DNA of 64,000 nt from Macrostomum lignano (lineage: Eukaryota): the NCBI GenBank assembly GCA_002269645.1, contig NIVC01001249.1:124001-188000 (forward strand), given 5' to 3'. Shown piece by piece: positions 23,988 to 56,174 of this stretch. Position 1 is the stretch's first letter. Each line of letters starts with the position of its first letter. The notes under the pieces were generated by a model. That model saw only the letters and a list, made by a program, of their open reading frames with translations. It had not been told where the DNA came from and did no database searches. A program made the position numbers and the translations under genes.

Positions 23988-24058
<71 letters not shown>

Positions 24059-24075
24059 CACAGACAGACAGACAC

Positions 24076-24124
<49 letters not shown>

Positions 24125-24137
24125 AAGACAGACAGAA

Positions 24138-24168
<31 letters not shown>

Positions 24169-27233: not shown

Positions 27234-32315
<5,082 letters not shown>

Positions 32316-35394: not shown

Positions 35395-36669
35395 ATGGAA
35401 ACAACAAAGTACGAGGCAAGGACCACTACCACTGTTTCCGAGGGCCCTGGCATTGGCTTTGATCGCAGCTACCTGACTTCTGTTCTTGGCATCCTGAATG
35501 CCATCATTGTGCTCGCCGCCTTCTGCATGGGCGTCTCCTGCTCTGTGCCGACACTATTCTGGAGCTTCACCTCTGCCGCCGCCTATTCCAGCTTTGTTGC
35601 CTGGCAGATTCTCGTTGTCTTCATCATCATCTACCTGTTCTATATGCTGCGCATCCTGCCCAAGATCCCCGGCCCCATCGGACTGGCGGTGAGCAGACAG
35701 AGCTGAGGCGCTAAGACAGACAGGCAGACAGACAGACACTTAGACAGACAGACAGACAGACAGACGGACAGACAGACAGAAACAGGCAGACAGACAGACA
35801 GACACTGAGGCGCTAAGACAGACAGGCAGACAGACAGACGGACAGACAGACAGAAACAGGCAGACAGACAGACAGACACTGAGGCGCTAAGACAGACGGA
35901 CAGACAGACGGACAGACAGACGGACAGACAGACGGACAGACAGACAGAAACAGGCAGACAGACACTGAGGCGCTAAGACAGACAGGCAGACAGGCAGACA
36001 CTAAGACACTGAGACAGACAGACAGACAGAAACAGGCAGACAGGCAGACAGACAGAAAGAAACAGGCAGATAGACAAACATTCAAAAAGACAATAGGACG
36101 TATTGGTACATAGACACTCAGACAGAAAGAAACAGAATAACAGACATGGTCTCAAGTCACAAGTCAAGTCAGTGACCCAGACAAATACTCATTACCTGAA
36201 TTCAATTGAACATTTCCCGCAGATGCTTATTTACCTGCTAATCAACTTTGTTTTTCTGTTCATCAGCATCGTGCTGTGCGCCATCAACATTGAGATATTT
36301 AAGGGCCCCGCGGCCTCCGCTATGGTGAGAGTCTGGAAGCTTTGCTTCAAGCAGTTTAATAGATTTAATAATTGCTCCTAAACTGCGCTATGAGAATTTT
36401 CATTGAAAATGCCAAGGTTCACCCTAAGCTCCAATTTCTAAGCTTTTGTTGCAAAAAATAGTAACAAAACCCGTTTATTACTACTAACCATCCGGCAGGT
36501 ATTCGCCCTAATCGTTATCGGCGGCCATTTCGGCGTCGGCTTCCTGCTATTTCAAAAGTGGCGCGCTTCCGGTCACTACTTTCACAAGGGCGAGTGCGGT
36601 CACACCTTCTCTAGCAGCACCGCTACCGCCACCGCCACGGCCCAGTCTGGGGAACCCGGCCGTTATTAA
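35395..36669 (+). CDS. MARVEL-domain tetraspan membrane protein (plasmolipin/CMTM-like), 188 aa
   Basis: Exons 35395-35688, 36223-36324 and 36499-36669 (all phase 0); GIGFDRSYLTSVLGIL N-terminal motif and four hydrophobic segments. Confidence 0.85.
35694..36070. repeat. (GACA)n-rich compound intronic repeat
   Basis: GACA runs punctuated by CTGAGGCGCTAA. Confidence 0.93.
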
Positions 36670-37510: not shown

Positions 37511-38335
37511 CAGTGACGTACCATTGACCACAATTTTCAAGATTTTAGCCATTCCCTTTTGATACGGTCATATAATTACCAACTATCCATTGCATGTTTT
37601 AATGTTTTCCATGTTGACTATCTCCGTGACTGGCTTCATGAGCAGATAATATATTGAATATTATTTTTACAGGGAACAAATTATTAATCTTTATCTCTAT
37701 ATTTCTAACCGTAGCTGTGGTCCAAAATGTTCTCTATTTATTAGCCTGTGAGTTTCCTGTGCAAATTGATAATTATTTACAAGTCTATACTTTCTGCGCT
37801 CAATCTATTTTTGGCTTTGATTGAATTTACGTTCAAACTACAAAGTACTCGTATATATAAGTTGCAATACTGATTTCTACAACCAAGTCACAGATTTTCT
37901 GCAAAAAGTTTGTGCAATACATATAGTCACATATCTCTAGTACAATAGCGCCTGTCGCAATGCCCAAATCAGTTCTTGTTTTTTATTGCCCTCTGCCAAA
38001 TGCGTTCATTCCGAAAAATATAAAAATATACGTTTATTATTGCAGTCCAAATTTTGTCGTTTTTTACGCTTTCGTCCATCGGTTCGATTTGGTTCATTTG
38101 AAAAATACTTTTGTTATTTTGTCATTTAAATTTTTTGGATATCTTCAGGACAACAGTAAATAGGCTCAATAGACTGAAATTTTGATTTCCCTAGGTTGTA
38201 CTAAACCCAAGGAATGCCAATACATCTTCAGCACAAAACAGCTTCTTAAATTTTAAGACAAACCATAGCGTCATTGCTTACCTGCCTACTGATAGTACAG
38301 TGGCAAGGAATTCGCAATTCGAATCCGATCAGAAG

Positions 38336-38878
38336 CCAACCAGCAGCCAGCCAACCAGCAGCAAGCCAACCAGCAGCCAGTTAATCAGCAGCCAGCCAAC
38401 CAGCAGCCAGCCAACCAGCAGCCACCCAACCAGCAGCCAGCCAATTAGCAGTCAGCCAACTAGCAGCCAGCCAATCAGCAGCCACCCAACCAGCAGCCAG
38501 CCAACCAGCAGTCAGCCAACCAGCAGCCACCCAACCAGCAGCCACCCAACCAGCAGCCAGCCAATCAGCAGCCACCCAACCAGCAGCCGCCCAACCAACA
38601 GTCAGCCAACCAGCAGCCAGCCAACCAGCAGCCAGCCAATTAGCAGTCAGCCAACTAGCAGCCAGCCAATCAGCAGCCACCCAACCAGCAGCCAGCCAAC
38701 CAGCAGTCAGCCAACCAGCAGCCACCCAACCAGCAGCCACCCAACCAGCAGCCAGCCAATCAGCAGCCACCCAACCAGCAGCCGCCCAACCAACAGTCAG
38801 CCAACCAGCAGCCAGCCAACCAGCAGCCCGCCAATCAGCAGCCAGCCAACCAGCAGCCAGCCAATCAGCAGCCAGCCA
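38336..38878 (+). repeat. 15-bp repeat (QPTSS)n abutting the carrier ATG; shorter versions at ~42766-43131, ~46887-47252 and ~51008-51373
   Basis: CAGCCAACCAGCAGC units with CAGCCAATCAGC variants; open in the carrier reading frame. Confidence 0.93.
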
Positions 38879-41111
38879 ATGGGCGGAGGTCGTCGAGCTC
38901 CAGACGCGGTGTCGGCCTACGCCGGCTTCCTCAGTGGCGCTACGGTTCGCGCGCTGCTGCAGCCGCTGGACGTGATCAAGATCAGGTGGCAACTGCAGCT
39001 GGAGTCCATCAGCAGACGGGGTGACGGCGGCACCTACCAGAGCCTGCCGCAGACTGTGGGCCGAATCCTACGGGAGGAAGGCGCTCGAGCACTGTGGAAG
39101 GGTCACGTGCCCTGCCAGGTGGTGTCGGTGCTGTTCAACTCGGTGCAGTTTTACACCTTCGAGCGCAGCGGGCCGCCAGTTCGGGAGCTTCTTGGAGGCG
39201 GCAGCGACTTTGGTGCAGACTTTGTGTGCGGCGGCATCTCTGGGGTAGCGGCGGCGCTGAGCTGCCACCCGTTCGACACCTTGCGGACACGGCTGATTGG
39301 GCAGAGCGAGAAGAACCGCGTGTACTCTGGTCTGGTGCACGCTGTGACCCACATGTGGCGGTCGGAGGGTCCGCGTGTGTTCTTCCAGGTGAGTCACTGA
39401 TTAGTGTGTTTTTCCAGGTGGGTCACTGACTGGTGTGTGTTCTTCCAGGTGGGCCACTGACTGGTGTGTGTGTTCTTCCAGGTGGGTCACTGATTGGCGT
39501 GTGTGTTCTTCCAGGTGGGTCACTGATTGGCGTGTGTGTTCTTCCAGGTGGGCCACTGACTGGTGTGTGTGTTCTTCCAGGTGGGTCACTGATTGGCGTG
39601 TGTGTTCTTCCAGGTGGGTCACTGACTGGTGTGTGTGTTTTTCCAGGTGGGTCACTGATTGCTGTGTTCGGTCACTGAGTCAAAATTTTGTTACATAACT
39701 TCAGGGTACAATTGCATTTTCAAATCACAAATGCCAGTCAGTTTGCCTCATCAATTTCCCCGCTCCATCTGCAGGGCCTGAATTCGAATCTGTGCATGAC
39801 GATGCCGCAGGCGGCTAGCCGGTTCGCCTTCTACAAGCTGCTGTTCGGCCCCCTGGCCGACCGTTCTTCGGCGTCAGCCGCGGCCGCCGGCTCCGGCTTT
39901 CTGTCCGGCGTGCTGTCCAAGGCCCTCGTCTACCCCTTCGACGTCATGAAGAAGCGCCAGCAGGTGCGCGGCTTCGAGGCCGCCCGACGCGCGTTTGGCC
40001 GCGTGCAGGTGAACATGCTGACACCCTTTAGGACTGTCTGACACCCTTTAGGACTGTCTGACACCCTTTAGGACTGTCTGACACTCTTTAGGACTGTCTG
40101 ACACCCTTTGGGACTGTCTGACACCCTTTGGGACTGTCTGACACCCTTTAGGACTGTCTGACACCCTTTAGGACTGTCTGACACCCTTTAGGACTGTCTG
40201 ACACCCTTTGGGACTGTCTGACACCCTTTAGGACTGTCTGACACCCTTTGGGACTGTCTGACACCCTTTAGGACTGTCTGACACCCTTTAGGACTGTCTG
40301 ACACCCTTTGGGACTGTCTGAAACCCTATAAAACTTTCTGACACCCTAGTTAGGACTCTCTGACACCATTTGAACCTGTCTGACACCCCTGGCACTGTCT
40401 GAAACCTCCCTTTTAATGTCAAATGTTTCGTAATAATTTCTGACACTTTTAACACATTAATAATGTCTGACACCTCTAGGACACGTCAACTACCCAGACT
40501 GTCGCCTGACACTCCTAACAGGTACTCCATGACACTTCAGGGCTGTAGCCTAGTGTTTAGAGCGTCGGGCTCACGACTTGAAGGTCGGGGGTTCGATTCC
40601 CGATCGCACTGGAACAGTTTGCGTCTTTGAGCAAGACACTTAACTCTGCATTGCTTCAGTTCACCCAGCTGTAAAATGGGTGCCAGCATAATTGAGGGTG
40701 TGTGGCGACCCCCCAGTCCTTGGACTGAACAGCCGTACGCAGCCTTCAGATGCGCCGCGCAAATAGCTGCGGCTGAGCTGTCGGTTGCACATCTACCCAA
40801 TTAGGGCAGTTGTAATCAACTATTGTATATTATTATATGACGCTTCAGCATATCGTCTCGCATATCTGTTTCCCTCGGACTACCTCCGCCACCAATGCCC
40901 TCTCACGCACCCTACACAGCCCCGCTCCCCGCAGGACTCGGGCAGCAGCCGGACCATCGCAGCCTGCGCCTCCTTCATCTGGCGCAACGAAGGCCTTCGC
41001 GGGTTCTACAAAGGCCTGGGCCCGTCAATGCTGAAGGCTGGCCTGTTCACGTCCACCACTTTCTACTTCTTTGAACTTTACCGCTCGCTAATTCTGTCCG
41101 CTTTGTACTAA
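38879..41111 (+). CDS. SLC25A19: Mitochondrial thiamine-pyrophosphate carrier-like, copy 1 (alpha type), 306 aa
   Basis: Exons 38879-39388, 39775-40008 and 40935-41111. [52 protein letters not shown] and [17 protein letters not shown] match SLC25A19. Confidence 0.88.
39376..39675 (+). repeat. 31-33-bp intron-1 repeat derived from the exon/intron junction (also ~43629-43796, ~47750-47917, 51870-52380)
   Basis: Unit GTGTGTTCTTCCAG|GTGGGTCACTGATTGGC copies the end of exon 1 plus the donor site. Confidence 0.93.
40018..40322. repeat. 20-bp intron-2 minisatellite (also at +4121 and +8242)
   Basis: About 15 copies of CTGACACCCTTTAGGACTGT. Confidence 0.94.
40540..40836 (+). mobile_element. tRNA-derived SINE with CORE-like domain
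   Basis: A-box-like TAGCCTAGTGTTTAG, B-box GGTTCGATTCCC, then CTTTGAGCAAGACACTTAAC...CTTCAGTTCACCCAGCTGTAAAATGGG resembling the MIR/CORE motif; AT-rich tail. Confidence 0.82.
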
Positions 41112-41569
41112 ACGCTAAAAATGCTCATATTGCTACTTCTATTGGCCAGGCTTTCAGTAGTACACGCGCGCATTTTTTGCTATTCTAACAACTGTACGAA
41201 ATGTACTTAAGAATCGCATCAATTCAAAATTTGTGTGCAATTCAATTGTATTCGGATCGTCAACTACAGTATTGATCCTGTTTTGCTTACATATGAATGT
41301 TTTTGCTCTTATTTTCCATTATGTTCTGGATTAATGTTCCGTTTACTCAAGCTTGCTGCAATAAAAGTAGAAATATGTCTGCTTAATGCAGTCTTGGTGC
41401 TTTTGTGTGCCTTGTTTAATTATTATTTTCATTCTTCCTTTCTTTTTGTCTTTACACTTTGAGTTTTTTTCGCTGGCTGCACACGTCTAAAAGCCGTTTA
41501 ACTGTGCACACTTGATTGTGTTATCAAGCCAATATGGTGTGAATGTACTTGTAGGGTAAGAGATTTGCT

Positions 41570-42220
41570 TTTCTAACCCTGAATGTACATACATACATTA
41601 TTGTTTGCAAGCCGTAGAGTAAGAACGTACATTCTGACAATGTACATTGCGGGGTAAGAGATTTGCTTTTCTAACCCTGAATGTACATTCATACTTTATT
41701 GTTTGCAAGCCATAGAGTAAGAACGTACATTCTGACAGTGTACATTGTGGGGTAAGAGATTTAATTTTCTAATCCCGAACGTACATTCTGTCTGTGTCAT
41801 TCATGGGGCAAGAGATTTGCTCCTGTAACCCTGAATGTACATACTTTATTGTTAGCAAGTCATAGAGTAAGAACGTACATTCTGACAATGTACATTGCGG
41901 GGTAAGAGATTTGCTTTTCTAACCCTGAATGTACATTCATACTTTATTGTTTGCAAGCCATAAAATAAGAACGTACATTCTGACAGTGTACATTGTGGGG
42001 TAAGAGATTTAATTTTCTAATCCCGAACGTACATTCTGTCTGTGTCATTCATGGGGCAAGAGATTTGCTCCTGTAACCCTGAATGTACATACTTTATTGT
42101 TAGCAAGTCATAGAGTAAGAACGTACATTCTGTCAGTGGTAAGAGATTTTCTCCTCTGCCCCTGAGCGTACATTGATTTTTTGTTAGCAAGTCACTTGCG
42201 TAAATGTACATTCTGTCAGA
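41570..42220. repeat. Complex intergenic repeat with a ~247-bp higher-order duplication (also at +4121 and +8242)
   Basis: Sub-units containing GTAAGAGATTT, CTAACCCTGAATGTACAT and ACGTACATTCTG. Confidence 0.85.
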
Positions 42221-43131
42221 GTAACATTAGAAAATTCGTATTGTTCCTTTTAATGGTTAAAAAATCTTTAATTAATTTTTATTCATTTGTTCTGCTGCTT
42301 TTAACATTAATTTTCTAAATAACAAAATCTACTGCAAGAAATCTTACCATGCCCTGTCGCGTGTACTTTTGCAACAATTATATCACCAACCAGCGGTAAC
42401 GACCGTCGACCAACCATCCTTTGCCCCACTACGAGTAATGCATTTTTGATACTATTGATAAATATAAAGTCCTGTGGTAATCTTTATTGATTAATTTTGT
42501 CGAAATTAATATCATTGAGGGGATGTTTAAAGATGTCAAAAAACGCTTTTAATAAATTACTCTGCCACTACGGTCTGACTCATTCAGAGCTGTTTAAAAA
42601 TTGGCTGAATTTACCTTGCTGCTCGAAGAACCAGTTGCCAACAATAAAAAGCTCCAGCAGCCAACCGGCAGTGGCGGTGAAAACCGTCTGAAACTGCCCA
42701 CTCATAGTGGCGTGGCGGAGACATCGCAGTCAAAATTGTTTGAGGCAGAGAAGTCAGAGCAGGGCCAGCCAACCAGCAACGTTCAAACCAGCAACGTTCA
42801 AACCAGCAGCCAGCCAATCAGCAGCCAGCCAATCAGCAACCAGCCAACCAGCAGCCAGCCAACCAGCAGCCAGCCAACCAGCAGCCAGCCAACCAGCAAC
42901 CAGCCAATCAGCAGCCAGCCAATCAGCAGCCACCCAATCAGTGGCCAGCCAACCAGCAGCCAGCCAACCAGCAGCCACCCAACCAGCAGCCACCCAACCA
43001 GCAGCCAGCCAATCAGCAGCCACCCAACCAGCAGCCGCCCAACCAACAGTCAGCCAACCAGCAGCCAGCCAACCAGCAGCCCGCCAATCAGCAGCCAGCC
43101 AACCAGCAGCCAGCCAACCAGCAGCCAGCCA

Positions 43132-45232
43132 ATGGGCGGAGGTCGTCGAGCTCCAGACGCGGTGTCGGCCTACGCCGGCTTCCTCAGTGGCGCCACGGTT
43201 CGCGCGCTGCTGCAGCCGCTGGACGTGATCAAGATCAGGTGGCAACTGCAGCTGGAGTCCATCAGCAGACGGGGTGACGGCGGCACCTACCAGAGCCTGC
43301 CGCAGACTGTGGGCCGAATCCTACGGGAGGAAGGCGCTCGAGCACTGTGGAAGGGTCACGTGCCCTGCCAGGTGGTGTCGGTGCTGTTCAACTCGGTGCA
43401 GTTTTACACCTTCGAGCGCAGCGGGCCGCCAGTTCGGGAGCTGCTCGGAGGCGGCAGCGACTTTGGTGCAGACTTTGTGTGCGGCGGCATCTCTGGGGTA
43501 GCGGCGGCGCTGAGCTGCCACCCGTTCGACACCTTGCGGACACGGCTGATTGGGCAGAGCGAGAAGAACCGCGTGTACTCTGGTCTGGTGCACGCTGTGA
43601 CCCACATGTGGCGGTCGGAGGGTCCGCGTGTGTTCTTCCAGGTGAGTCACTGATTAGTGTGTTTTTCCAGGTGGGTCACTGACTGGTGTGTGTTCTTCCA
43701 GGTGGGCCACTGACTGGTGTGTGTGTTCTTCCAGGTGGGTCACTGACTGGTGTGTGTGTTTTTCCAGGTGGGTCACTGATTGCTGTGTTCGGTCACTGAG
43801 TCAAAATTTTGTTACATAACTTCAGGGTACAATTGCATTTTCAAATCACAAATGCCAGTCAGTTTGCCTCATCAATTTCCCCGCTCCATCTGCAGGGCCT
43901 GAATTCGAATCTGTGCATGACGATGCCGCAGGCGGCTAGCCGGTTCGCCTTCTACAAGCTGCTGTTCGGCCCCCTGGCCGACCGTTCTTCGGCGTCAGCC
44001 GCGGCCGCCGGCTCCGGCTTTCTGTCCGGCGTGCTGTCCAAGGCCCTCGTCTACCCCTTCGACGTCATGAAGAAGCGCCAGCAGGTGCGCGGCTTCGAGG
44101 CCGCCCGACGCGCGTTTGGCCGCGTGCAGGTGAACATGCTGACACCCTTTAGGACTGTCTGACACCCTTTAGGACTGTCTGACACCCTTTAGGACTGTCT
44201 GACACTCTTTAGGACTGTCTGACACCCTTTGGGACTGTCTGACACCCTTTGGGACTGTCTGACACCCTTTAGGACTGTCTGACACCCTTTAGGACTGTCT
44301 GACACCCTTTAGGACTGTCTGACACCCTTTGGGACTGTCTGACACCCTTTAGGACTGTCTGACACCCTTTGGGACTGTCTGACACCCTTTAGGACTGTCT
44401 GACACCCTTTAGGACTGTCTGACACCCTTTGGGACTGTCTGAAACCCTATAAAACTTTCTGACACCCTAGTTAGGACTCTCTGACACCATTTGAACCTGT
44501 CTGACACCCCTGGCACTGTCTGAAACCTCCCTTTTAATGTCAAATGTTTCGTAATAATTTCTGACACTTTTAACACATTAATAATGTCTGACACCTCTAG
44601 GACACGTCAACTACCCAGACTGTCGCCTGACACTCCTAACAGGTACTCCATGACACTTCAGGGCTGTAGCCTAGTGTTTAGAGCGTCGGGCTCACGACTT
44701 GAAGGTCGGGGGTTCGATTCCCGATCGCACTGGAACAGTTTGCGTCTTTGAGCAAGACACTTAACTCTGCATTGCTTCAGTTCACCCAGCTGTAAAATGG
44801 GTGCCAGCATAATTGAGGGTGTGTGGCGACCCCCCAGTCCTTGGACTGAACAGCCGTACGCAGCCTTCAGATGCGCCGCGCAAATAGCTGCGGCTGAGCT
44901 GTCGGTTGCACATCTACCCAATTAGGGCAGTTGTAATCAACTATTGTATATTATTATATGACGCTTCAGCATATCGTCTCGCATATCTGTTTCCCTCGGA
45001 CTACCTCCGCCACCAATGCCCTCTCACGCACCCTACACAGCCCCGCTCCCCGCAGGACTCGGGCAGCAGCCGGACCATCGCAGCCTGCGCCTCCTTCATC
45101 TGGCGCAACGAAGGCCTTCGCGGGTTCTACAAAGGCCTGGGCCCGTCAATGCTGAAGGCTGGCCTGTTCACGTCCACCACTTTCTACTTCTTTGAACTTT
45201 ACCGCTCGCTAATTCTGTCCGCTTTGTACTAA
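43132..45232 (+). CDS. SLC25A19: SLC25A19-like copy 2 (chimera: beta 5' region with alpha exons 2-3)
   Basis: Exons 43132-43641, 43896-44129 and 45056-45232. Confidence 0.87.
44661..44957 (+). mobile_element. CORE-like SINE, copy within tandem unit 2
   Basis: Same sequence as 40540-40836 at +4121. Confidence 0.82.
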
Positions 45233-47252
45233 ACGCTAAAAATGCTCATATTGCTACTTCTATTGGCCAGGCTTTCAGTAGTACACGCGCGCATTTTTTG
45301 CTATTCTAACAACTGTACGAAATGTACTTAAGAATCGCATCAATTCAAAATTTGTGTGCAATTCAATTGTATTCGGATCGTCAACTACAGTATTGATCCT
45401 GTTTTGCTTACATATGAATGTTTTTGCTCTTATTTTCCATTATGTTCTGGATTAATGTTCCGTTTACTCAAGCTTGCTGCAATAAAAGTAGAAATATGTC
45501 TGCTTAATGCAGTCTTGGTGCTTTTGTGTGCCTTGTTTAATTATTATTTTCATTCTTCCTTTCTTTTTGTCTTTACACTTTGAGTTTTTTTCGCTGGCTG
45601 CACACGTCTAAAAGCCGTTTAACTGTGCACACTTGATTGTGTTATCAAGCCAATATGGTGTGAATGTACTTGTAGGGTAAGAGATTTGCTTTTCTAACCC
45701 TGAATGTACATACATACATTATTGTTTGCAAGCCGTAGAGTAAGAACGTACATTCTGACAATGTACATTGCGGGGTAAGAGATTTGCTTTTCTAACCCTG
45801 AATGTACATTCATACTTTATTGTTTGCAAGCCATAGAGTAAGAACGTACATTCTGACAGTGTACATTGTGGGGTAAGAGATTTAATTTTCTAATCCCGAA
45901 CGTACATTCTGTCTGTGTCATTCATGGGGCAAGAGATTTGCTCCTGTAACCCTGAATGTACATACTTTATTGTTAGCAAGTCATAGAGTAAGAACGTACA
46001 TTCTGACAATGTACATTGCGGGGTAAGAGATTTGCTTTTCTAACCCTGAATGTACATTCATACTTTATTGTTTGCAAGCCATAAAATAAGAACGTACATT
46101 CTGACAGTGTACATTGTGGGGTAAGAGATTTAATTTTCTAATCCCGAACGTACATTCTGTCTGTGTCATTCATGGGGCAAGAGATTTGCTCCTGTAACCC
46201 TGAATGTACATACTTTATTGTTAGCAAGTCATAGAGTAAGAACGTACATTCTGTCAGTGGTAAGAGATTTTCTCCTCTGCCCCTGAGCGTACATTGATTT
46301 TTTGTTAGCAAGTCACTTGCGTAAATGTACATTCTGTCAGAGTAACATTAGAAAATTCGTATTGTTCCTTTTAATGGTTAAAAAATCTTTAATTAATTTT
46401 TATTCATTTGTTCTGCTGCTTTTAACATTAATTTTCTAAATAACAAAATCTACTGCAAGAAATCTTACCATGCCCTGTCGCGTGTACTTTTGCAACAATT
46501 ATATCACCAACCAGCGGTAACGACCGTCGACCAACCATCCTTTGCCCCACTACGAGTAATGCATTTTTGATACTATTGATAAATATAAAGTCCTGTGGTA
46601 ATCTTTATTGATTAATTTTGTCGAAATTAATATCATTGAGGGGATGTTTAAAGATGTCAAAAAACGCTTTTAATAAATTACTCTGCCACTACGGTCTGAC
46701 TCATTCAGAGCTGTTTAAAAATTGGCTGAATTTACCTTGCTGCTCGAAGAACCAGTTGCCAACAATAAAAAGCTCCAGCAGCCAACCGGCAGTGGCGGTG
46801 AAAACCGTCTGAAACTGCCCACTCATAGTGGCGTGGCGGAGACATCGCAGTCAAAATTGTTTGAGGCAGAGAAGTCAGAGCAGGGCCAGCCAACCAGCAA
46901 CGTTCAAACCAGCAACGTTCAAACCAGCAGCCAGCCAATCAGCAGCCAGCCAATCAGCAACCAGCCAACCAGCAGCCAGCCAACCAGCAGCCAGCCAACC
47001 AGCAGCCAGCCAACCAGCAACCAGCCAATCAGCAGCCAGCCAATCAGCAGCCACCCAATCAGTGGCCAGCCAACCAGCAGCCAGCCAACCAGCAGCCACC
47101 CAACCAGCAGCCACCCAACCAGCAGCCAGCCAATCAGCAGCCACCCAACCAGCAGCCGCCCAACCAACAGTCAGCCAACCAGCAGCCAGCCAACCAGCAG
47201 CCCGCCAATCAGCAGCCAGCCAACCAGCAGCCAGCCAACCAGCAGCCAGCCA

Positions 47253-49353
47253 ATGGGCGGAGGTCGTCGAGCTCCAGACGCGGTGTCGGCCTACGCCGGC
47301 TTCCTCAGTGGCGCCACGGTTCGCGCGCTGCTGCAGCCGCTGGACGTGATCAAGATCAGGTGGCAACTGCAGCTGGAGTCCATCAGCAGACGGGGTGACG
47401 GCGGCACCTACCAGAGCCTGCCGCAGACTGTGGGCCGAATCCTACGGGAGGAAGGCGCTCGAGCACTGTGGAAGGGTCACGTGCCCTGCCAGGTGGTGTC
47501 GGTGCTGTTCAACTCGGTGCAGTTTTACACCTTCGAGCGCAGCGGGCCGCCAGTTCGGGAGCTGCTCGGAGGCGGCAGCGACTTTGGTGCAGACTTTGTG
47601 TGCGGCGGCATCTCTGGGGTAGCGGCGGCGCTGAGCTGCCACCCGTTCGACACCTTGCGGACACGGCTGATTGGGCAGAGCGAGAAGAACCGCGTGTACT
47701 CTGGTCTGGTGCACGCTGTGACCCACATGTGGCGGTCGGAGGGTCCGCGTGTGTTCTTCCAGGTGAGTCACTGATTAGTGTGTTTTTCCAGGTGGGTCAC
47801 TGACTGGTGTGTGTTCTTCCAGGTGGGCCACTGACTGGTGTGTGTGTTCTTCCAGGTGGGTCACTGACTGGTGTGTGTGTTTTTCCAGGTGGGTCACTGA
47901 TTGCTGTGTTCGGTCACTGAGTCAAAATTTTGTTACATAACTTCAGGGTACAATTGCATTTTCAAATCACAAATGCCAGTCAGTTTGCCTCATCAATTTC
48001 CCCGCTCCATCTGCAGGGCCTGAATTCGAATCTGTGCATGACGATGCCGCAGGCGGCTAGCCGGTTCGCCTTCTACAAGCTGCTGTTCGGCCCCCTGGCC
48101 GACCGTTCTTCGGCGTCAGCCGCGGCCGCCGGCTCCGGCTTTCTGTCCGGCGTGCTGTCCAAGGCCCTCGTCTACCCCTTCGACGTCATGAAGAAGCGCC
48201 AGCAGGTGCGCGGCTTCGAGGCCGCCCGACGCGCGTTTGGCCGCGTGCAGGTGAACATGCTGACACCCTTTAGGACTGTCTGACACCCTTTAGGACTGTC
48301 TGACACCCTTTAGGACTGTCTGACACTCTTTAGGACTGTCTGACACCCTTTGGGACTGTCTGACACCCTTTGGGACTGTCTGACACCCTTTAGGACTGTC
48401 TGACACCCTTTAGGACTGTCTGACACCCTTTAGGACTGTCTGACACCCTTTGGGACTGTCTGACACCCTTTAGGACTGTCTGACACCCTTTGGGACTGTC
48501 TGACACCCTTTAGGACTGTCTGACACCCTTTAGGACTGTCTGACACCCTTTGGGACTGTCTGAAACCCTATAAAACTTTCTGACACCCTAGTTAGGACTC
48601 TCTGACACCATTTGAACCTGTCTGACACCCCTGGCACTGTCTGAAACCTCCCTTTTAATGTCAAATGTTTCGTAATAATTTCTGACACTTTTAACACATT
48701 AATAATGTCTGACACCTCTAGGACACGTCAACTACCCAGACTGTCGCCTGACACTCCTAACAGGTACTCCATGACACTTCAGGGCTGTAGCCTAGTGTTT
48801 AGAGCGTCGGGCTCACGACTTGAAGGTCGGGGGTTCGATTCCCGATCGCACTGGAACAGTTTGCGTCTTTGAGCAAGACACTTAACTCTGCATTGCTTCA
48901 GTTCACCCAGCTGTAAAATGGGTGCCAGCATAATTGAGGGTGTGTGGCGACCCCCCAGTCCTTGGACTGAACAGCCGTACGCAGCCTTCAGATGCGCCGC
49001 GCAAATAGCTGCGGCTGAGCTGTCGGTTGCACATCTACCCAATTAGGGCAGTTGTAATCAACTATTGTATATTATTATATGACGCTTCAGCATATCGTCT
49101 CGCATATCTGTTTCCCTCGGACTACCTCCGCCACCAATGCCCTCTCACGCACCCTACACAGCCCCGCTCCCCGCAGGACTCGGGCAGCAGCCGGACCATC
49201 GCAGCCTGCGCCTCCTTCATCTGGCGCAACGAAGGCCTTCGCGGGTTCTACAAAGGCCTGGGCCCGTCAATGCTGAAGGCTGGCCTGTTCACGTCCACCA
49301 CTTTCTACTTCTTTGAACTTTACCGCTCGCTAATTCTGTCCGCTTTGTACTAA
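47253..49353 (+). CDS. SLC25A19: SLC25A19-like copy 3 (apparently identical to copy 2)
   Basis: Exons 47253-47762, 48017-48250 and 49177-49353; exact 4121-bp offset and identical ORF translations. Confidence 0.87.
48782..49078 (+). mobile_element. CORE-like SINE, copy within tandem unit 3
   Basis: Same sequence at +8242. Confidence 0.82.
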
Positions 49354-51373
49354 ACGCTAAAAATGCTCATATTGCTACTTCTATTGGCCAGGCTTTCAGT
49401 AGTACACGCGCGCATTTTTTGCTATTCTAACAACTGTACGAAATGTACTTAAGAATCGCATCAATTCAAAATTTGTGTGCAATTCAATTGTATTCGGATC
49501 GTCAACTACAGTATTGATCCTGTTTTGCTTACATATGAATGTTTTTGCTCTTATTTTCCATTATGTTCTGGATTAATGTTCCGTTTACTCAAGCTTGCTG
49601 CAATAAAAGTAGAAATATGTCTGCTTAATGCAGTCTTGGTGCTTTTGTGTGCCTTGTTTAATTATTATTTTCATTCTTCCTTTCTTTTTGTCTTTACACT
49701 TTGAGTTTTTTTCGCTGGCTGCACACGTCTAAAAGCCGTTTAACTGTGCACACTTGATTGTGTTATCAAGCCAATATGGTGTGAATGTACTTGTAGGGTA
49801 AGAGATTTGCTTTTCTAACCCTGAATGTACATACATACATTATTGTTTGCAAGCCGTAGAGTAAGAACGTACATTCTGACAATGTACATTGCGGGGTAAG
49901 AGATTTGCTTTTCTAACCCTGAATGTACATTCATACTTTATTGTTTGCAAGCCATAGAGTAAGAACGTACATTCTGACAGTGTACATTGTGGGGTAAGAG
50001 ATTTAATTTTCTAATCCCGAACGTACATTCTGTCTGTGTCATTCATGGGGCAAGAGATTTGCTCCTGTAACCCTGAATGTACATACTTTATTGTTAGCAA
50101 GTCATAGAGTAAGAACGTACATTCTGACAATGTACATTGCGGGGTAAGAGATTTGCTTTTCTAACCCTGAATGTACATTCATACTTTATTGTTTGCAAGC
50201 CATAAAATAAGAACGTACATTCTGACAGTGTACATTGTGGGGTAAGAGATTTAATTTTCTAATCCCGAACGTACATTCTGTCTGTGTCATTCATGGGGCA
50301 AGAGATTTGCTCCTGTAACCCTGAATGTACATACTTTATTGTTAGCAAGTCATAGAGTAAGAACGTACATTCTGTCAGTGGTAAGAGATTTTCTCCTCTG
50401 CCCCTGAGCGTACATTGATTTTTTGTTAGCAAGTCACTTGCGTAAATGTACATTCTGTCAGAGTAACATTAGAAAATTCGTATTGTTCCTTTTAATGGTT
50501 AAAAAATCTTTAATTAATTTTTATTCATTTGTTCTGCTGCTTTTAACATTAATTTTCTAAATAACAAAATCTACTGCAAGAAATCTTACCATGCCCTGTC
50601 GCGTGTACTTTTGCAACAATTATATCACCAACCAGCGGTAACGACCGTCGACCAACCATCCTTTGCCCCACTACGAGTAATGCATTTTTGATACTATTGA
50701 TAAATATAAAGTCCTGTGGTAATCTTTATTGATTAATTTTGTCGAAATTAATATCATTGAGGGGATGTTTAAAGATGTCAAAAAACGCTTTTAATAAATT
50801 ACTCTGCCACTACGGTCTGACTCATTCAGAGCTGTTTAAAAATTGGCTGAATTTACCTTGCTGCTCGAAGAACCAGTTGCCAACAATAAAAAGCTCCAGC
50901 AGCCAACCGGCAGTGGCGGTGAAAACCGTCTGAAACTGCCCACTCATAGTGGCGTGGCGGAGACATCGCAGTCAAAATTGTTTGAGGCAGAGAAGTCAGA
51001 GCAGGGCCAGCCAACCAGCAACGTTCAAACCAGCAACGTTCAAACCAGCAGCCAGCCAATCAGCAGCCAGCCAATCAGCAACCAGCCAACCAGCAGCCAG
51101 CCAACCAGCAGCCAGCCAACCAGCAGCCAGCCAACCAGCAACCAGCCAATCAGCAGCCAGCCAATCAGCAGCCACCCAATCAGTGGCCAGCCAACCAGCA
51201 GCCAGCCAACCAGCAGCCACCCAACCAGCAGCCACCCAACCAGCAGCCAGCCAATCAGCAGCCACCCAACCAGCAGCCGCCCAACCAACAGTCAGCCAAC
51301 CAGCAGCCAGCCAACCAGCAGCCCGCCAATCAGCAGCCAGCCAACCAGCAGCCAGCCAACCAGCAGCCAGCCA

Positions 51374-54300
51374 ATGGGCGGAGGTCGTCGAGCTCCAGAC
51401 GCGGTGTCGGCCTACGCCGGCTTCCTCAGTGGCGCCACGGTTCGCGCGCTGCTGCAGCCGCTGGACGTGATCAAGATCAGGTGGCAACTGCAGCTGGAGT
51501 CCATCAGCAGACGGGGTGACGGCGGCACCTACCAGAGCCTGCCGCAGACTGTGGGCCGAATCCTACGGGAGGAAGGCGCTCGAGCACTGTGGAAGGGTCA
51601 CGTGCCCTGCCAGGTGGTGTCGGTGCTGTTCAACTCGGTGCAGTTTTACACCTTCGAGCGCAGCGGGCCGCCAGTTCGGGAGCTGCTCGGAGGCGGCAGC
51701 GACTTTGGTGCAGACTTTGTGTGCGGCGGCATCTCTGGGGTAGCGGCGGCGCTGAGCTGCCACCCGTTCGACACCTTGCGGACACGGCTGATTGGGCAGA
51801 GCGAGAAGAACCGCGTGTACTCTGGTCTGGTGCACGCTGTGACCCACATGTGGCGGTCGGAGGGTCCGCGTGTGTTCTTCCAGGTGGGTCACTGATTGGC
51901 GTGTGTGTTCTTCCAGGTGGGTCACTGATTGGCGTGTGTGTTCTTCCAGGTGGGTCACTGATTGGCGTGTGTGTTCTTCCAGGTGGGTCACTGATTGGCG
52001 TGTGTTCTTCCAGGTGGGTCACTGATTGGCGTGTGTTCTTCCAGGTGGGTTACTGATTAGTGTGATCTTCCAGATGGGTCACTGATTAGTGTGTTCTTCC
52101 AGGTGGGTCCCTGATTAGTGTGTTCTTCCAGGTGGGTCACTGATTGGTGTGTTTTCTTCCAGGTGGGTCACTGATTGGTGTGTGTTCTTCCAGGTGGGAC
52201 ACTGATTGCTGTGTTTTCTTCCAGGTGGGTCACTGATTGGCGTGTGTTCTTCCAGGTGGGTCACTGATTAGTGTGTTCTTCCAGCTGGGTCACTGACTGG
52301 TGTGTGTTCTTCCAGGTGGGTCACTGATTGGTGTGTTTTCTTCCAGGTGGGTCACTGATTGCTGTGTGTTCTTCCAGGTGTGACACGGATCGGTGTGTAC
52401 TATGTTTCATTGGCTTTCCACGTTACATACTGGCCCTGTGGGTCAGAGTGGCCCTGTGCCGTAGCAAATCTGCAGTCTAATATCTTGCTCCATCACTTTG
52501 CCGCAGGGCCTGGGCCCCAACCTAGCCATGATGGCCGGTCAGTCCAGTGTGCACTTTGCCGTCTACCACGGCCTGCGCCGCCTCCTGAACGACGTCGACG
52601 GCAGTGTCGGCAGCAGCGGGGGCGACGCCCTGACGGCAGGTTTCGCGGCCGGCGTGGCAGCCAAGTCGGTAGTTTATCCGCTGGACGTGCTGAAGAAGCG
52701 CCAGCAGGTCCGCGGCTTCGAGGCTGCCCGACTCTGCTTTGGCCGGGTGCAGGTGAGGCTGGAGCTGGTATGGTAGTCATATCCCAGTCACATCCCAGTC
52801 ACATGCCAGTCACATTCCAGTCGCATGACAGTCACTTCAATCACAGGTATGCCACATCCCAGTCACAGATAAGCCACATCCCAGTCACAGGAAAGCCACA
52901 TCCCAGTCACAGGTAAGCCACCTCCGAGTCACAGATAAGTGACATCCCAGTCACAGCTCAGTCACATCGCAGTCTCAGATAAGCCACATCCAAGTCACAG
53001 ATAAGCCACATCCAAGTCACAGATAAGCCACATCCAAGTCACAGGTAAGCCACCTCCGAGTCACAGATAAGTGACATCCCAGTCACAGCTCAGTCACATC
53101 GCAGTCTCAGATAAGCCACATCCAAGTCACAGATAAGCCACATCCCAGTCACAGGAAAGCCACATCCCAGTCACAGGTAAGCCACCTCCGAGTCACAGAT
53201 AAGTGACATCCCAGTCACAGCTCAGTCACATCGCAGTCTCAGATAAGCCACATCCAAGTCACAGATAAGCCACATCCAAGTCACAGATAAGCCACATCCA
53301 AGTCACAGGTAAGCCACCTCCGAGTCACAGATAAGTGACATCCCAGTCACAGCTCAGTCACATCGCAGTCTCAGATAAGCCACATCCAAGTCACAGATAA
53401 GCCACATCCCAGTCACAGGAAAGCCACATCCCAGTCACAGGTAAGTCACATCCAAGTCACAGATAAGCCACATCCCAGTCACAGATAAGTGACATCCCAG
53501 TCACAGATAAGTGACATCCCAGTCACAGGTAAGCCACATCCAAGTCACAGGTAAGCCACATCCCAGTCACAGGTAAGTCACATCCCAGTCACAGGTAAGC
53601 CACATCCCAGTCACAGATAAGTCACATCCCAGTCACAGATAAGTCACATCCCAGTCACAGATAAGTCACATCCCAGTCACAGGAAAGCCACATCCCAGTC
53701 ACAGGTAAGCCACATCCCAGTCACAGGTAAGCCACATCCCAGTCACAGGAAAGCCACATCCCAGTCACAGGTAAACCACATCCAAGTCACAGGTAAGCCA
53801 CATCCCAGTCACAGGTAAGCCACATCCCAGTCACAAATAAGCCACATCCCAGTCACAGATAAGTCACATCCCAGTCACAGATAAGTCACATCCCAGTCAC
53901 AGGAAAGCCACATCCCAGTCACAGGTAAGCCACATCCCAGTCACAGATAAGTCACATCCCAGTCACAGGAAAGCCACATCCCAGTCACAGGTAAGCCACA
54001 TCCCAGTCACAGGTTAGTCACATCCCAGTCACAGGTAAGCCACATCCCAGTCACAGGTAAGCCACATCCCAGTCACAGGTAAGCCACATCCCAGTCACAG
54101 GTAAGCCACATCTTAGTCACAGGTAAGCCACATCCCAGTCACAGGTAAGCCACATCTTAGTCACAGGTAAGCCACATCCCAGTTACACCTGAGCCTGCCA
54201 CAGCTCATCCAGTGCCCCCAATTCGCTGCTCAAACCGCAGACTCCGGCCAGTCGCTGGGCCGCTGCCTACGCAGCCGACATGATTCGCCGAGAAGGCCCC

Positions 54301-54411
54301 ACCGCGCTGTTCAAAGGCTTCGTTCCCGCTGCCATGAAGTCTGGTCTGGTTACTGGGCTCACGTTTTACACCTATGAGGCCTATGTGGCCCTGCTGGTTG
54401 ATAAACGCTAA
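51374..54411 (+). CDS. SLC25A19: SLC25A19-like copy 4 (beta type, divergent exons 2-3), 308 aa
   Basis: Exons 51374-51883, 52507-52752 and 54241-54411; GLGPNLAMM...[19 protein letters not shown]; REGPTALFKGFVPAAMKSG...KR*. Confidence 0.85.
52778..54183 (+). repeat. 22-bp intronic minisatellite with CAG|GTAAG variants
   Basis: About 60 copies of CACATCCCAGTCACAG(G/A)TAAGC. Confidence 0.95.
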
Positions 54412-54654
54412 ACAGGCACATGGTGGGGCGAATCCCGTCCTGATTTTAGTTTGTTGCAAATTTCACTACTAATACTACTTTATAGTAATATTTCAAAAAC
54501 CCTTGCCTTTAGAAGCTTTTTTCCAGCTGTTTCTTTTGTCTTTCGTTTAGAAGTTGGCGCCTAAATTCCTATGATAAAAATGAAAGTTTAAATAGTCACT
54601 CGTGTACTTCTGTTTCGGTTTTTGTCCAGGATTTCTTTGACGGAATTGTGCACG

Positions 54655-54942
54655 TTCAGGAGCGGATTGGGGGCGGATGTTCAGGAGCGGATTGGGGGCG
54701 GATGTTATTGAGCGGATTGGGGGCGGATGTTATTGAGCGGATTGGGGGCGGATGTTATTGAGCGGATTGGGGGCGGATGTTATTGAGCGGATTGGGGGCG
54801 GATGTTCAGGAGCGGAATGGGCGGATATTCAGGAGCAGATTGGGGGCGGATGTTCAGGAGCGGATTGGGGGCGGATGTTCAGGAGCGGATTGGGGGCGGA
54901 TATTCAGGAGCGGATTAGGGGCGGATGTTCAGGAGCGGATTT
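54655..54942. repeat. 23-25-bp minisatellite
   Basis: About 11 copies of AGGAGCGGATTGGGGGCGGATGTTC. Confidence 0.92.
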
Positions 54943-55654
54943 GGATTCTCACTGTAGACTGTAAGGTGTAGATTTGCAAAGTCTACAAAGTCTATTTCTT
55001 GCGTCTTTGCAATGATCTTTCTTGGCTGAAATTTCATGAAACTTTGCTGTGGTTTTTTTTGTAAATTCATTAGTTATTTCGAATGCTTCAAATATATATT
55101 GTATTGCTAGATTCTTTTTTTAAATAAAAAACATACAGTTAACACAATTTTTTTCTGATTTTTGTAAAGCAAAAAAAAACAGTTTGCGCATTTATTTGTC
55201 CCAGCTACTAGCAGTAGTATGCTTGGTTAAAGTTTAGTTAAAGCGTAAAAGTTGTTGATGTTTGATGTTAGCTTAAGAGTGCATAAAAGCAATTGAAAAA
55301 ACGCATTGCAGACACTTTTGTTCCAATCGCATTGGAAAAATTATGATGACTTTTGACAAGCGAAGGTGTAAAGCTGATTAAAGATTCAAAATATGTACAC
55401 AACAGTTCTTAAAAAAGTATTAGTAGTGCTAATATATAAGCTGCTATGTCAGTCGCGCTTATCAGAACCCGGAGCAAATTATCACGCTTCTCTCATGGAC
55501 TTTCAATTCAACCTTCACGGTCTCCGGAATCTGTGGGCGGATTTTATAATGGTTGGTGAGCGTTTGAAATATTACTGGCGAATGATGGAGTCTAATGGGA
55601 TGAGCGCGTATGGGGGGATTACAGGATCTGTTGAATTATGAAAACTAGAAAATT

Positions 55655-56100
55655 ATGCAATTCGGGGGATTTAGGAAACCAGGGGAATTATTAAATCTAA
55701 GGAATTATAAAAATCTAGGGGAATTATGAAATCCGGGGGATTTTAGCATCCGGGGATTTAGGAAACCAGGGGAACTATTAAATCTAAAAAATTATAAAAA
55801 TCTAGGGGAATTATGAAATCCGGGGGAATTATAAAAATCTGGGGGAATTATGAAATCCGGGGGAATTATAAAAATCTGGGGGAATTATGAAATCCGGAGG
55901 AAATTATGAAATCCTGAGTATTGTGAAATTATTGCAATTATGAAATCAGAGGGAATTATGAAATCCGGGGGAATTATGAAATCCGGGGGAATTATGAAAT
56001 CCGGGGAATTATGAAATCCGGGGGAATTATGAAATCCAGGGGAACTATGAAATCCAGGGGAATTATGAAATCCAGGGTATTTATAAAATCTAGGGGAATT
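55655..56100. repeat. ~19-bp degenerate repeat downstream of the CELF stop
   Basis: GGGGAATTATGAAATCC(G/A) units. Confidence 0.88.
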
Positions 56101-56174
56101 ATGAACCCCTTAGTAATAAAAGGGAGTAATGCAACCTCACTAATGAATGGTTTGAGAAGCTGCTCACGTCTCAG

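What the first reader, a model, noticed from the sequence alone, without database searches (positions are those of the whole stretch)
38879..54411. Four-gene SLC25A19 array with chimeric middle copies; crossover maps to ~200 bp
Seen: the period is 4121 bp. Copies 2-3 have the upstream region and silent exon-1 alleles of copy 4 (GCC; CTG CTC at 43441-46) but the donor GTGAGT, introns and exons 2-3 of copy 1 (which has GCT; CTT CTT). The switch falls in the identical stretch 43447-43644. Inference: unequal crossover between alpha and beta paralogues, followed by amplification, put the alpha protein under the beta promoter. Copies 2 and 3 look identical, so the expansion is very recent or an assembly over-expansion.
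Basis: partly seen in the sequence, partly recalled or inferred. Interest (0 to 1): 0.7.

Follow-up and report, generated by a model that had tools for sequence, protein, structure and literature searches.

The report
Recombinant carrier-gene array in a flatworm
In the flatworm Macrostomum lignano, unequal recombination between two neighbouring thiamine-pyrophosphate-carrier genes made hybrid extra copies, and an unexpanded two-gene version of the locus survives elsewhere in the same genome; this is a clean but ordinary example of how gene arrays grow.

Summary
The window is Macrostomum lignano assembly Mlig_3_7, contig NIVC01001249.1. It carries four same-strand, three-exon SLC25A19-like genes. 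A 12,289-bp block (39598-51886) repeats with period 4121 and has no mismatch. Copies 1-3 encode the same 306-aa protein (alpha). Copy 4 (beta, 308 aa) shares exon 1, but its exons 2-3 are only 46% identical to alpha.

Copies 2-3 carry beta alleles at -14, +63, +312 and +315 and the alpha donor GTGAGT at +514. The single switch falls in 43447-43644.

A paralogous contig (NIVC01000725.1) holds only alpha plus beta, with the same paralogue-specific alleles. That is the pre-expansion state, so the hybrids are real beta-5'/alpha-3' recombinants. The best explanation is non-allelic homologous recombination in the minisatellite-flanked exon-1 block, followed by a second unequal exchange.

The hybrids have a private 5-unit intron-1 minisatellite. 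The older ML2 assembly also gives four genes. Both points argue against a simple mis-join, but the two assemblies share the same PacBio reads, so the exact copy number is unproven.

The "beta promoter" claim is untested, and the annotation suggests one trans-spliced transcriptional unit. This is a new example of a known kind of event, of moderate-to-low interest.

The parts
38334..38878 (+). 15-bp minisatellite (m15, about 36 units) in the alpha-type leader just upstream of the copy-1 ATG. It is the left edge of the 5' homology block.
   Evidence: TRF. It is open in the CDS frame with no upstream Met. The site at -14 is T in alpha-type copies and C in beta-type copies.
38879..41111 (+). Copy 1, the parental alpha gene (exons 38879-39388, 39775-40008, 40935-41111; 306 aa). 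GenBank PAA70320.1, Mlig025088g2.
   Evidence: Exon-1 alleles are T/T/T and the donor is GTGAGT.
39389..39667 (+). Intron-1 minisatellite of copy 1 (m33, 9 units). Each unit repeats the last 14 nt of exon 1 plus a GTGGGT donor.
39598..51886 (+). Perfectly periodic block: 2.98 units of 4121 bp with 0 mismatches.
41112..43131 (+). Inter-gene segment, repeated at +4121 and +8242. It contains AATAAA at 41360, a 98/248-bp tandem repeat at 41542-42219, the only [T/C]TNCAG trans-acceptor-like motif (CTCCAG, 42652-42657), and the beta-type m15 array at 42764-43131.
43132..45232 (+). Copy 2, a hybrid gene. It has beta-type upstream DNA and beta-type exon-1 alleles (C/G/C), with the alpha donor, introns and exons 2-3. 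It encodes the alpha protein. GenBank PAA70321.1 or PAA70322.1.
43447..43644 (+). Crossover interval: 198 bp identical in alpha and beta, lying between the last beta-specific site and the first alpha-specific site. The equivalent in copy 3 is 47568-47765.
43642..43788 (+). Intron-1 minisatellite of the hybrids (5 units: U1 U2 U3 U8 U9). This array length is found in no parental alpha gene.
47253..49353 (+). Copy 3, a second hybrid gene, identical to copy 2.
51374..54411 (+). Copy 4, the parental beta gene (exons 51374-51883, 52507-52752, 54241-54411; 308 aa). The donor is GTGGGT. Intron 1 holds a 17-unit m33 array (51884-52398) and intron 2 a 22-bp minisatellite (52789-54187). GenBank PAA70323.1, Mlig025088g5.

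Best explanation
The ancestral locus was a tandem pair of SLC25A19-type carrier genes, alpha then beta.

Their exons 2-3 are anciently diverged. Their 5' blocks had already been homogenised, presumably by gene conversion. Each block runs from the 15-bp leader minisatellite through exon 1 to the 33-bp intron-1 minisatellite and is about 1.0-1.3 kb long. The result was two direct repeats 99.4% identical in exon 1 and about 4.25 kb apart.

Step 1 (inferred). Misaligned pairing put beta's block against alpha's block. A crossover occurred in the last 198 bp of exon 1. The product was alpha - hybrid (beta 5' / alpha body) - beta, the anti-Lepore-type duplication product.

Step 2 (inferred). The hybrid's intron-1 minisatellite lost four units (132 bp).

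Step 3 (inferred). A second unequal exchange between the now identical 4121-bp units added a second hybrid.

What is shown directly is the end state, the parental two-gene state in a paralogous locus, and the single switch of paralogue-specific alleles.

Consequence. Three genes encode the identical alpha protein and one encodes beta. Two of the alpha genes carry beta's leader and upstream DNA. The effect, if any, is on dosage or regulation, not on protein sequence.
For: 1. Structure. A perfect 12,289-bp periodic block and identical copies 2 and 3.

2. One clean switch. All 40+ variable sites left of +315 are beta-like and all sites right of +513 are alpha-like.

3. Pre-expansion control. Contig NIVC01000725.1 (L002) is colinear with the window's flanks at 97-98.6% identity. 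It holds only alpha + beta, with alpha = T(-14)/T/T/T/GTGAGT and beta = C/C/G/C/GTGGGT.

4. The hybrids share the window-beta alleles at exon-1 positions 147 and 507 (C, C), whereas L002 beta has T, T. Their 5' part therefore came in cis from this locus's own beta.

5. Arithmetic. The parental spacing is 4253 bp = the 4121 period + 4 x 33 bp, and the missing units U4-U7 are exactly identifiable.

6. The substrate exists. Exon 1 of alpha and beta differs at 3 of 510 nt, while exons 2-3 are 57% identical at nucleotide level and 46% at amino-acid level, with 20 of 36 four-fold sites identical.

7. Against a false overlap join. The hybrids' 5-unit m33 array occurs in no alpha parent (9 units here, 8 in L002 and L005).

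8. A different assembler gave the same order. ML2 fused model A0A1I8JBK7 reads MARVEL - alpha(-14 T) - alpha body with -14 C - alpha body with -14 C - beta.
Against: No reads could be examined.

ML2 and Mlig_3_7 were built from the same PacBio data set, SRX1063031, so their agreement is not independent at read level.

The assembly was Pilon-polished with multi-mapping short reads. That can erase small differences between near-identical copies, so '0 differences' may overstate how recent the event is.

Copy-number errors are documented as common in this assembly.

A third, L002-like contig breaks off inside the inter-gene segment, which shows the region is hard to assemble.

The crossover interval rests on four SNP-type sites on the 5' side and one donor SNP plus minisatellite units on the 3' side.

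No reciprocal deletion product was found.
Confidence: 0.75

Rival explanations
1. Assembly artefact. Only alpha + beta exist at this locus. The hybrid copies arise from false overlaps in the 1-kb shared 5' block, or from folding reads of another paralogous locus into a tandem loop.
For: Canu was run with errorRate 0.04 on a genome present in about 3 paralogous copies at about 2% divergence, and copy-number errors are frequent in this assembly. A false join inside exon 1 would also give a single allele switch. A sister contig ends inside the array. Perfect identity of the copies is what polishing with multi-mapped reads would produce.
Against: The hybrids have a private 5-unit intron-1 minisatellite that no parental alpha copy has, whereas a false join would carry the 9- or 8-unit array. 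A second assembler (ML2) gives the same four-gene order on one contig and a hybrid-then-beta order on another. The array is internal to a 227-kb contig and contains no Ns. A 1-kb repeat is far shorter than typical PacBio overlaps at 130x coverage.
Confidence: 0.1
2. The hybrid gene is real but the count is wrong. There is one hybrid copy (a three-gene array), or more than two, and the assembler mis-counted identical 4.1-kb units.
For: Copies 2 and 3 are indistinguishable. Only reads of at least about 12.4 kb can count the units. The documented expansions and collapses of paralogous blocks apply here too.
Against: Two assemblers agree on two hybrids, although from the same reads.
Confidence: 0.25
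3. Gene conversion rather than crossover. The alpha unit was first duplicated in tandem by some other event. The 5' blocks of the new copies were then converted by beta (or copy 1's block was converted or diverged at the edge of the array).
For: The 5' block has clearly been homogenised between alpha and beta before (exon 1 99.4% identical vs 57% for exons 2-3). A 3-kb tract with 0 substitutions between the window and L002 suggests ongoing conversion-like exchange.
Against: This needs more events. The upstream DNA of the hybrids beyond the homology block (the inter-gene segment) is simply what lies upstream of beta, as a crossover predicts. The unit length equals the parental spacing minus whole minisatellite units.
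Confidence: 0.1

Closest known systems
Haemoglobin anti-Lepore and the CYP11B1/CYP11B2 chimeric gene (unequal crossover between tandem paralogues, duplication product)
   Same: Two direct-repeat paralogues. A crossover in a stretch of shared sequence. A hybrid gene sits between both intact parents, carrying the 5'/upstream part of the downstream gene and the body of the upstream gene. This comparison rests on established knowledge, not on a test here.
   Different: The hybrid protein here is identical to one parent, because exon 1 is identical at protein level. The hybrid has been amplified a second time. The organism trans-splices and may co-transcribe the array, so 'promoter swap' may not apply.
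Red/green opsin and alpha-globin arrays (copy-number change by non-allelic homologous recombination, with concerted evolution)
   Same: A tandem array whose copy number changes by unequal exchange. Parts of the repeat are homogenised while others stay diverged.
   Different: Homogenisation here is confined to an exon-1 cassette bounded on both sides by minisatellites. The contrast between 99.4% identity (exon 1) and 57% (exons 2-3) within one gene pair is extreme.
SLC25A19 / yeast Tpc1 (mitochondrial thiamine pyrophosphate carrier)
   Same: Three Mito_carr repeats, the PX[DE]XX[KR]X[KR] motifs, the QV.GFE.AR..FG loop in repeat 3, and best named hits at 40-45% identity.
   Different: Most animals in the hit list show one gene. 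Here there is an alpha/beta pair differing in helix 4 to helix 6, plus hybrid copies. No transport data exist.
SLC25A3 phosphate-carrier isoforms A/B (mutually exclusive exons)
   Same: Two carrier isoforms share most of the protein and differ in one block. This is an analogy from general knowledge.
   Different: Here each isoform has its own gene and its own copy of exon 1. There is no evidence of alternative splicing between cassettes.

Membership tests
SLC25A19-type mitochondrial carrier | Three tandem ~100-aa Mito_carr repeats | tested here: met
   PF00153 matches three times in both alpha and beta, E = 4e-56 and 8.5e-56.
SLC25A19-type mitochondrial carrier | Signature PX[DE]XX[KR]X[KR] on helices 1, 3 and 5 | tested here: met
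   Read from the translations: [16 protein letters not shown], and PFDVMKKR (alpha) or PLDVLKKR (beta).
SLC25A19-type mitochondrial carrier | Closest named relatives are thiamine pyrophosphate carriers, and the subfamily loop QV.GFE.AR..FG is present in repeat 3 | tested here: met
   Nearly all named hits outside Macrostomum are called mitochondrial thiamine pyrophosphate carrier, 40-45% identity among the best. The loop is present in alpha, beta and the orthologues. No explicit phylogeny against other SLC25 subfamilies was made.
SLC25A19-type mitochondrial carrier | Transports thiamine pyrophosphate across the inner mitochondrial membrane | not testable with these tools
   Needs reconstitution or complementation.
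Hybrid gene made by non-allelic homologous recombination (duplication product) | Parental paralogues in direct orientation that share a homology block, seen in an unexpanded state | tested here: met
   L002 has alpha + beta only, with ATGs 4000 bp apart.
Hybrid gene made by non-allelic homologous recombination (duplication product) | A single switch of paralogue-specific variants inside shared sequence | tested here: met
   The switch lies in 43447-43644 and no site is incompatible.
Hybrid gene made by non-allelic homologous recombination (duplication product) | The added unit equals the spacing of the recombining blocks | tested here: met
   4253 bp spacing vs the 4121 period + 132 bp (four m33 units).
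Hybrid gene made by non-allelic homologous recombination (duplication product) | A reciprocal deletion product (single alpha-5'/beta-3' gene) exists in the population | not tested
   Only three contigs of one inbred line were reachable. The third contig is truncated.
Hybrid gene made by non-allelic homologous recombination (duplication product) | Physical confirmation by spanning molecules | not testable with these tools
   No read data were available.
SL-trans-spliced operon of M. lignano | Same-strand genes in one transcriptional unit, repeat-adjusted spacing under 1 kb, and an SL acceptor before each gene | tested here: inconclusive
   Locus tags Mlig025088g1 (MARVEL), g2, g4 and g5 share one prefix; one hybrid's tag number was not shown by the tool. 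The prefix marks clusters of similar transcriptional units. The inter-gene distance is 2020 bp, of which about 1050 bp is tandem repeat. One CTCCAG motif lies upstream of each beta-type leader, and tttaag precedes the 5' end of the copy-1 model. No SL-read data were seen.

The most novel reading that the evidence does not exclude
The array is part of one SL-trans-spliced polycistronic unit, and the minisatellite-bounded exon-1 cassette is a recurrent recombination module.

Its two flanking minisatellites would drive both the alpha/beta homogenisation of exon 1 and subgenome-specific amplification of alpha, as a dosage change in a neopolyploid.

In addition, the M. lignano spliced leader ends in AUG, and the leader is open in frame with the carrier. 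The 15-bp minisatellite might therefore be translated as a QPTSS-repeat N-terminal extension. In that case the hybrids would encode a new protein: beta-type extension plus alpha carrier.
Probability: 0.08. Interest if true: 0.6.

Novelty: new member of a known kind. Interest (0 to 1): 0.35.

Why it matters
The locus offers a before-and-after pair inside one genome. One paralogous copy is still alpha + beta. The other has grown to alpha + 2 hybrids + beta, with the exchange mapped to 198 bp and no later substitutions.

That makes it a convenient natural example of three processes in a recent polyploid: how paralogous loci start to differ in gene content, how exon-level concerted evolution creates the substrate for later unequal exchange, and how minisatellites flank such events.

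It is also a practical warning for M. lignano users. Three loci encode the identical alpha protein, short reads cannot tell them apart, and expression estimates, RNAi and knock-out designs for this carrier will hit several copies.

It does not reveal a new mechanism.

Tried and rejected
- Independent DNA for the ML2 models (P0121, P0001) is not on record.
It was reached instead through cluster membership.
- A homology search with beta exons 2-3 alone, meant to find beta-like genes in other species or a third locus, returned nothing, not even the window's own protein. The age and spread of the alpha/beta split stay unresolved. Local scoring shows only that beta's best partner is alpha (score 265 vs at most 236 to orthologues).
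- Lookup of the exon-1 ORF (ATG to the intron stop) in read-derived assemblies found nothing.
- A third paralogous contig was found through the MARVEL neighbour. It is L002-like, full of 1-bp indels, and ends in the inter-gene segment, so it says nothing on copy number.
- A literature search for the gene or its locus tags in Macrostomum found nothing. No supplementary tables were held for the trans-splicing paper.
- Crossover inside the intron-1 minisatellite was considered and rejected, because the hybrids keep alpha's first three units, including GTGAGT.
- A single gene with alternative 3' cassettes was considered and rejected, because each cassette has its own exon 1 and the GenBank models are separate.
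- A tRNA-like stretch seen by eye in alpha intron 2 was not supported by ARAGORN or Rfam.
Full report
**Where the window comes from.** The best protein hits are Macrostomum lignano entries. A lookup of one of them returned contig NIVC01001249.1 of assembly GCA_002269645.1 (Mlig_3_7). That contig is 100% identical to window 40897-64000 over 23,104 bp. The window is therefore record positions 124001-188000 of that contig. It has no Ns and is extremely rich in minisatellites, as published for this genome.

**Checking the observation.**
- Self-comparison at offset 4121 shows no mismatch from 39598 to 47765. The block 39598-51886 (12,289 bp, 2.98 units) is therefore perfectly periodic.
- Four three-exon genes lie on the + strand, all with GT-AG introns.
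  - Copy 1: 38879-39388 / 39775-40008 / 40935-41111.
  - Copy 2: 43132-43641 / 43896-44129 / 45056-45232.
  - Copy 3: copy 2 + 4121.
  - Copy 4: 51374-51883 / 52507-52752 / 54241-54411.
- These models reproduce the GenBank product lengths once the open 5' leader is added.
- Copies 1-3 encode the same 306-aa protein. Copy 4 encodes 308 aa.
- The four exon 1 sequences differ at just three silent sites: T vs C at 38941, and T,T vs G,C at 39190 and 39193. Copy 1 stands against copies 2 = 3 = 4 at each.
- The donor is GTGAGT in copies 1-3 and GTGGGT in copy 4.
- A three-way site table shows one clean switch. Every variable site from -367 to +314 has the pattern c1 != c2 = c4. Every variable site from +513 onward has c1 = c2 != c4.

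**What the genes are.** Both proteins have three Mito_carr repeats. They carry the carrier signature on helices 1, 3 and 5, and the QV.GFE.AR..FG loop seen in the orthologues. Outside Macrostomum, nearly all named hits are mitochondrial thiamine pyrophosphate carriers (SLC25A19), the best at 40-45% identity. The only solved structures found by sequence are other carrier subfamilies.

**Alpha and beta compared.**
- They share exon 1 (170 aa identical; 3 of 510 nt differ).
- Exons 2-3 are 46% identical in protein and 57% in DNA. Four-fold sites are close to saturation, with 20 of 36 identical.
- Beta's best partner is still alpha (local score 265 against at most 236 to any orthologue). Beta is probably an old, fast-evolving lineage-specific duplicate.
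- Between the two paralogous loci, beta shows 10 synonymous and 3 non-synonymous differences and keeps an intact frame. That pattern suggests purifying selection.

The gene pair is thus a mosaic. The body is anciently diverged. The 5' block is recently homogenised and runs from the 15-bp leader minisatellite through exon 1 into the 33-bp intron-1 minisatellite.

**The decisive control.** Cluster membership of the GenBank products led to a second contig of the same assembly, NIVC01000725.1 (L002).
- It is colinear with the window's flanks at 97-98.6% identity. That matches the about 2.2% divergence published for the three paralogous genome copies of this neopolyploid.
- It carries the same upstream MARVEL gene, then only alpha and beta.
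- Its alpha has T at -14, T/T/T in exon 1 and GTGAGT. Its beta has C, C/G/C and GTGGGT.
- The diagnostic sites are therefore fixed differences between the paralogues, older than the split of the two loci. The window's copies 2-3 (beta alleles on the left, alpha donor on the right) are true recombinants.
- At exon-1 positions 147 and 507, the hybrids share the window's beta alleles rather than those of L002's beta. Their 5' part came from this locus's own beta.

**Mechanism.** The simplest history is non-allelic homologous recombination.
1. Beta's 5' block paired with alpha's 5' block, which lies 4253 bp upstream.
2. A crossover in the last 198 bp of exon 1 produced alpha - hybrid - beta.
3. 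The hybrid's intron-1 minisatellite lost four units (U4-U7, 132 bp). This explains 4253 - 132 = 4121.
4. A second unequal exchange between identical units added the second hybrid.

The start state, the end state and the switch are shown. The order of events and the crossover itself are inferred. Gene conversion after some other duplication needs more steps and is less likely. The array has no substitutions across 12.3 kb, while paralogous loci differ by about 2%. Taken at face value, the expansion is at most about 1% as old as the genome duplication. Polishing could have erased a few differences.

**Is it an assembly artefact?** Reads were not available.

Points in favour of an artefact:
- The genome is present in about three near-identical copies, and copy-number errors in Mlig_3_7 are documented.
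- Canu was run with a permissive error rate, and Pilon used multi-mapping reads.
- A third, L002-like contig (NIVC01002788.1) stops inside the inter-gene segment.

Points against an artefact:
- The hybrids have a private 5-unit intron-1 minisatellite. The alpha genes have 9 units here and 8 in L002 and L005. A false overlap join in exon 1 would have carried the parental array.
- The older ML2 assembly, made with another assembler, yields a fused UniProt model in the order MARVEL - alpha (-14 T) - alpha body with -14 C - alpha body with -14 C - beta. A second ML2 model reads hybrid then beta.
- However, ML2 and Mlig_3_7 used the same PacBio reads, so this agreement is only partial independence.

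My estimates: at least one hybrid copy is real, about 0.85-0.9; there are exactly two, about 0.6.

**The "beta promoter" claim.** Copies 2-3 do have the DNA that lies upstream of beta, namely the alpha 3' flank plus the beta-type leader. Whether that DNA is a promoter is unknown.
- The GenBank locus tags of the MARVEL gene and the carrier genes share one prefix: Mlig025088g1, g2, g4 and g5 here (one hybrid's tag number was not shown by the tool), and Mlig015576g3-g5 in L002. The prefix comes from the annotators' transcriptional units, which often are multi-gene precursors cut at trans-splice and poly(A) sites.
- The inter-gene segment has an AATAAA 249 nt after the alpha stop. It has a single CTCCAG match to the published trans-acceptor motif just before the beta-type leader.
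- The hybrids may therefore have inherited beta's acceptor and leader rather than a promoter. This was not testable here.

**Comparison with known cases.** The event works like haemoglobin anti-Lepore, the CYP11B1/B2 chimera, or opsin-array exchanges. A hybrid lies between two intact parents after unequal crossover in shared sequence. It differs in three ways:
- The hybrid protein equals one parent.
- The hybrid has been amplified again.
- The substrate for exchange is an exon-1 cassette bounded by minisatellites inside an otherwise very diverged gene pair.

No paper mentions these genes. In GenBank they are annotated only as hypothetical proteins.

**Verdict.** This is a real-looking and very well resolved, but mechanistically ordinary, case of array growth by non-allelic homologous recombination in a neopolyploid flatworm. 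It is a new member of a known kind. Interest is 0.35.

Noticed in passing
window 39389-39667, 43642-43788, 51884-52398 (also L002 and L005): The intron-1 minisatellite is built from copies of the last 14 nt of exon 1 plus the 5' splice site (…GTGTGTTCTTCCAG|GTGGGTCACTGA…). The real donor is therefore followed by 4, 8 or 16 near-identical decoy donors. Reading on from any of them hits TGA after three codons. In beta the real donor (GTGGGT) is identical to its decoys.
   Followed up: partly
window 38258-38878, 42622-43131 and the +4121 and +8242 copies: The 15-bp leader minisatellite (QPTSS repeats) and the unique leader are open in the CDS frame back to the annotated 5' ends, with no upstream Met. 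The M. lignano spliced leader ends in ATG (PMC8629364). An SL-donated start could therefore add a 160-207-aa repeat extension. GenBank marks these CDSs as 5'-partial.
   Followed up: partly
window 38706-41757 vs L002 10479-13577: The alpha gene, introns included, shows no substitution between the two paralogous loci. Only minisatellite unit indels differ. By contrast, beta and the flanks differ by 2-5%. This could reflect recent exchange between paralogous loci, or an effect of read correction and polishing.
   Followed up: partly
window 27029-32403: A 5.4-kb insertion that is absent from both paralogous contigs (L002, L005). It encodes a 726-aa ORF with reverse transcriptase and RNase H domains, so it is a non-LTR retrotransposon.
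   Followed up: partly
L005 (NIVC01002788.1, record 43810-60744): This third contig is L002-like (99.2% identical) and dense in 1-bp indels, including a frameshift in alpha exon 1. It ends in the inter-gene segment right after alpha, so the contig breaks inside the array.
   Followed up: yes
window 52789-54187: Beta intron 2 holds 64 copies of a 22-bp unit, CACATCCCAGTCACAGGTAAGC. Each unit contains a consensus-like 5' splice site (CAG|GTAAGC). Alpha intron 2 starts with a different 20-bp minisatellite at 40018-40406.
   Followed up: no
window 35395-36669 (+), 20010-25667 (-), 56175-56663 (-), 893-966 (-): Neighbouring genes: a 188-aa MARVEL-like membrane protein directly upstream and on the same strand (PAA70319.1); a RhoGEF/SH3 gene; the last exon of an RRM protein that looks CELF/Bruno-like, convergent with the array; and a tRNA-Gln(TTG).
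   Followed up: partly
window 41542-42219 (and the +4121 and +8242 copies): A 98/248-bp tandem repeat occupies a third of the inter-gene segment. Together with the m15 array it makes about half of the 2020-bp spacer repetitive. This matters for the repeat-adjusted operon criterion used for this species.
   Followed up: no
window 40527-40610: A stretch in alpha intron 2 looks tRNA-like by eye (…GGTTCGATTCCCG…), possibly a SINE head. Neither ARAGORN nor Rfam reports it.
   Followed up: partly
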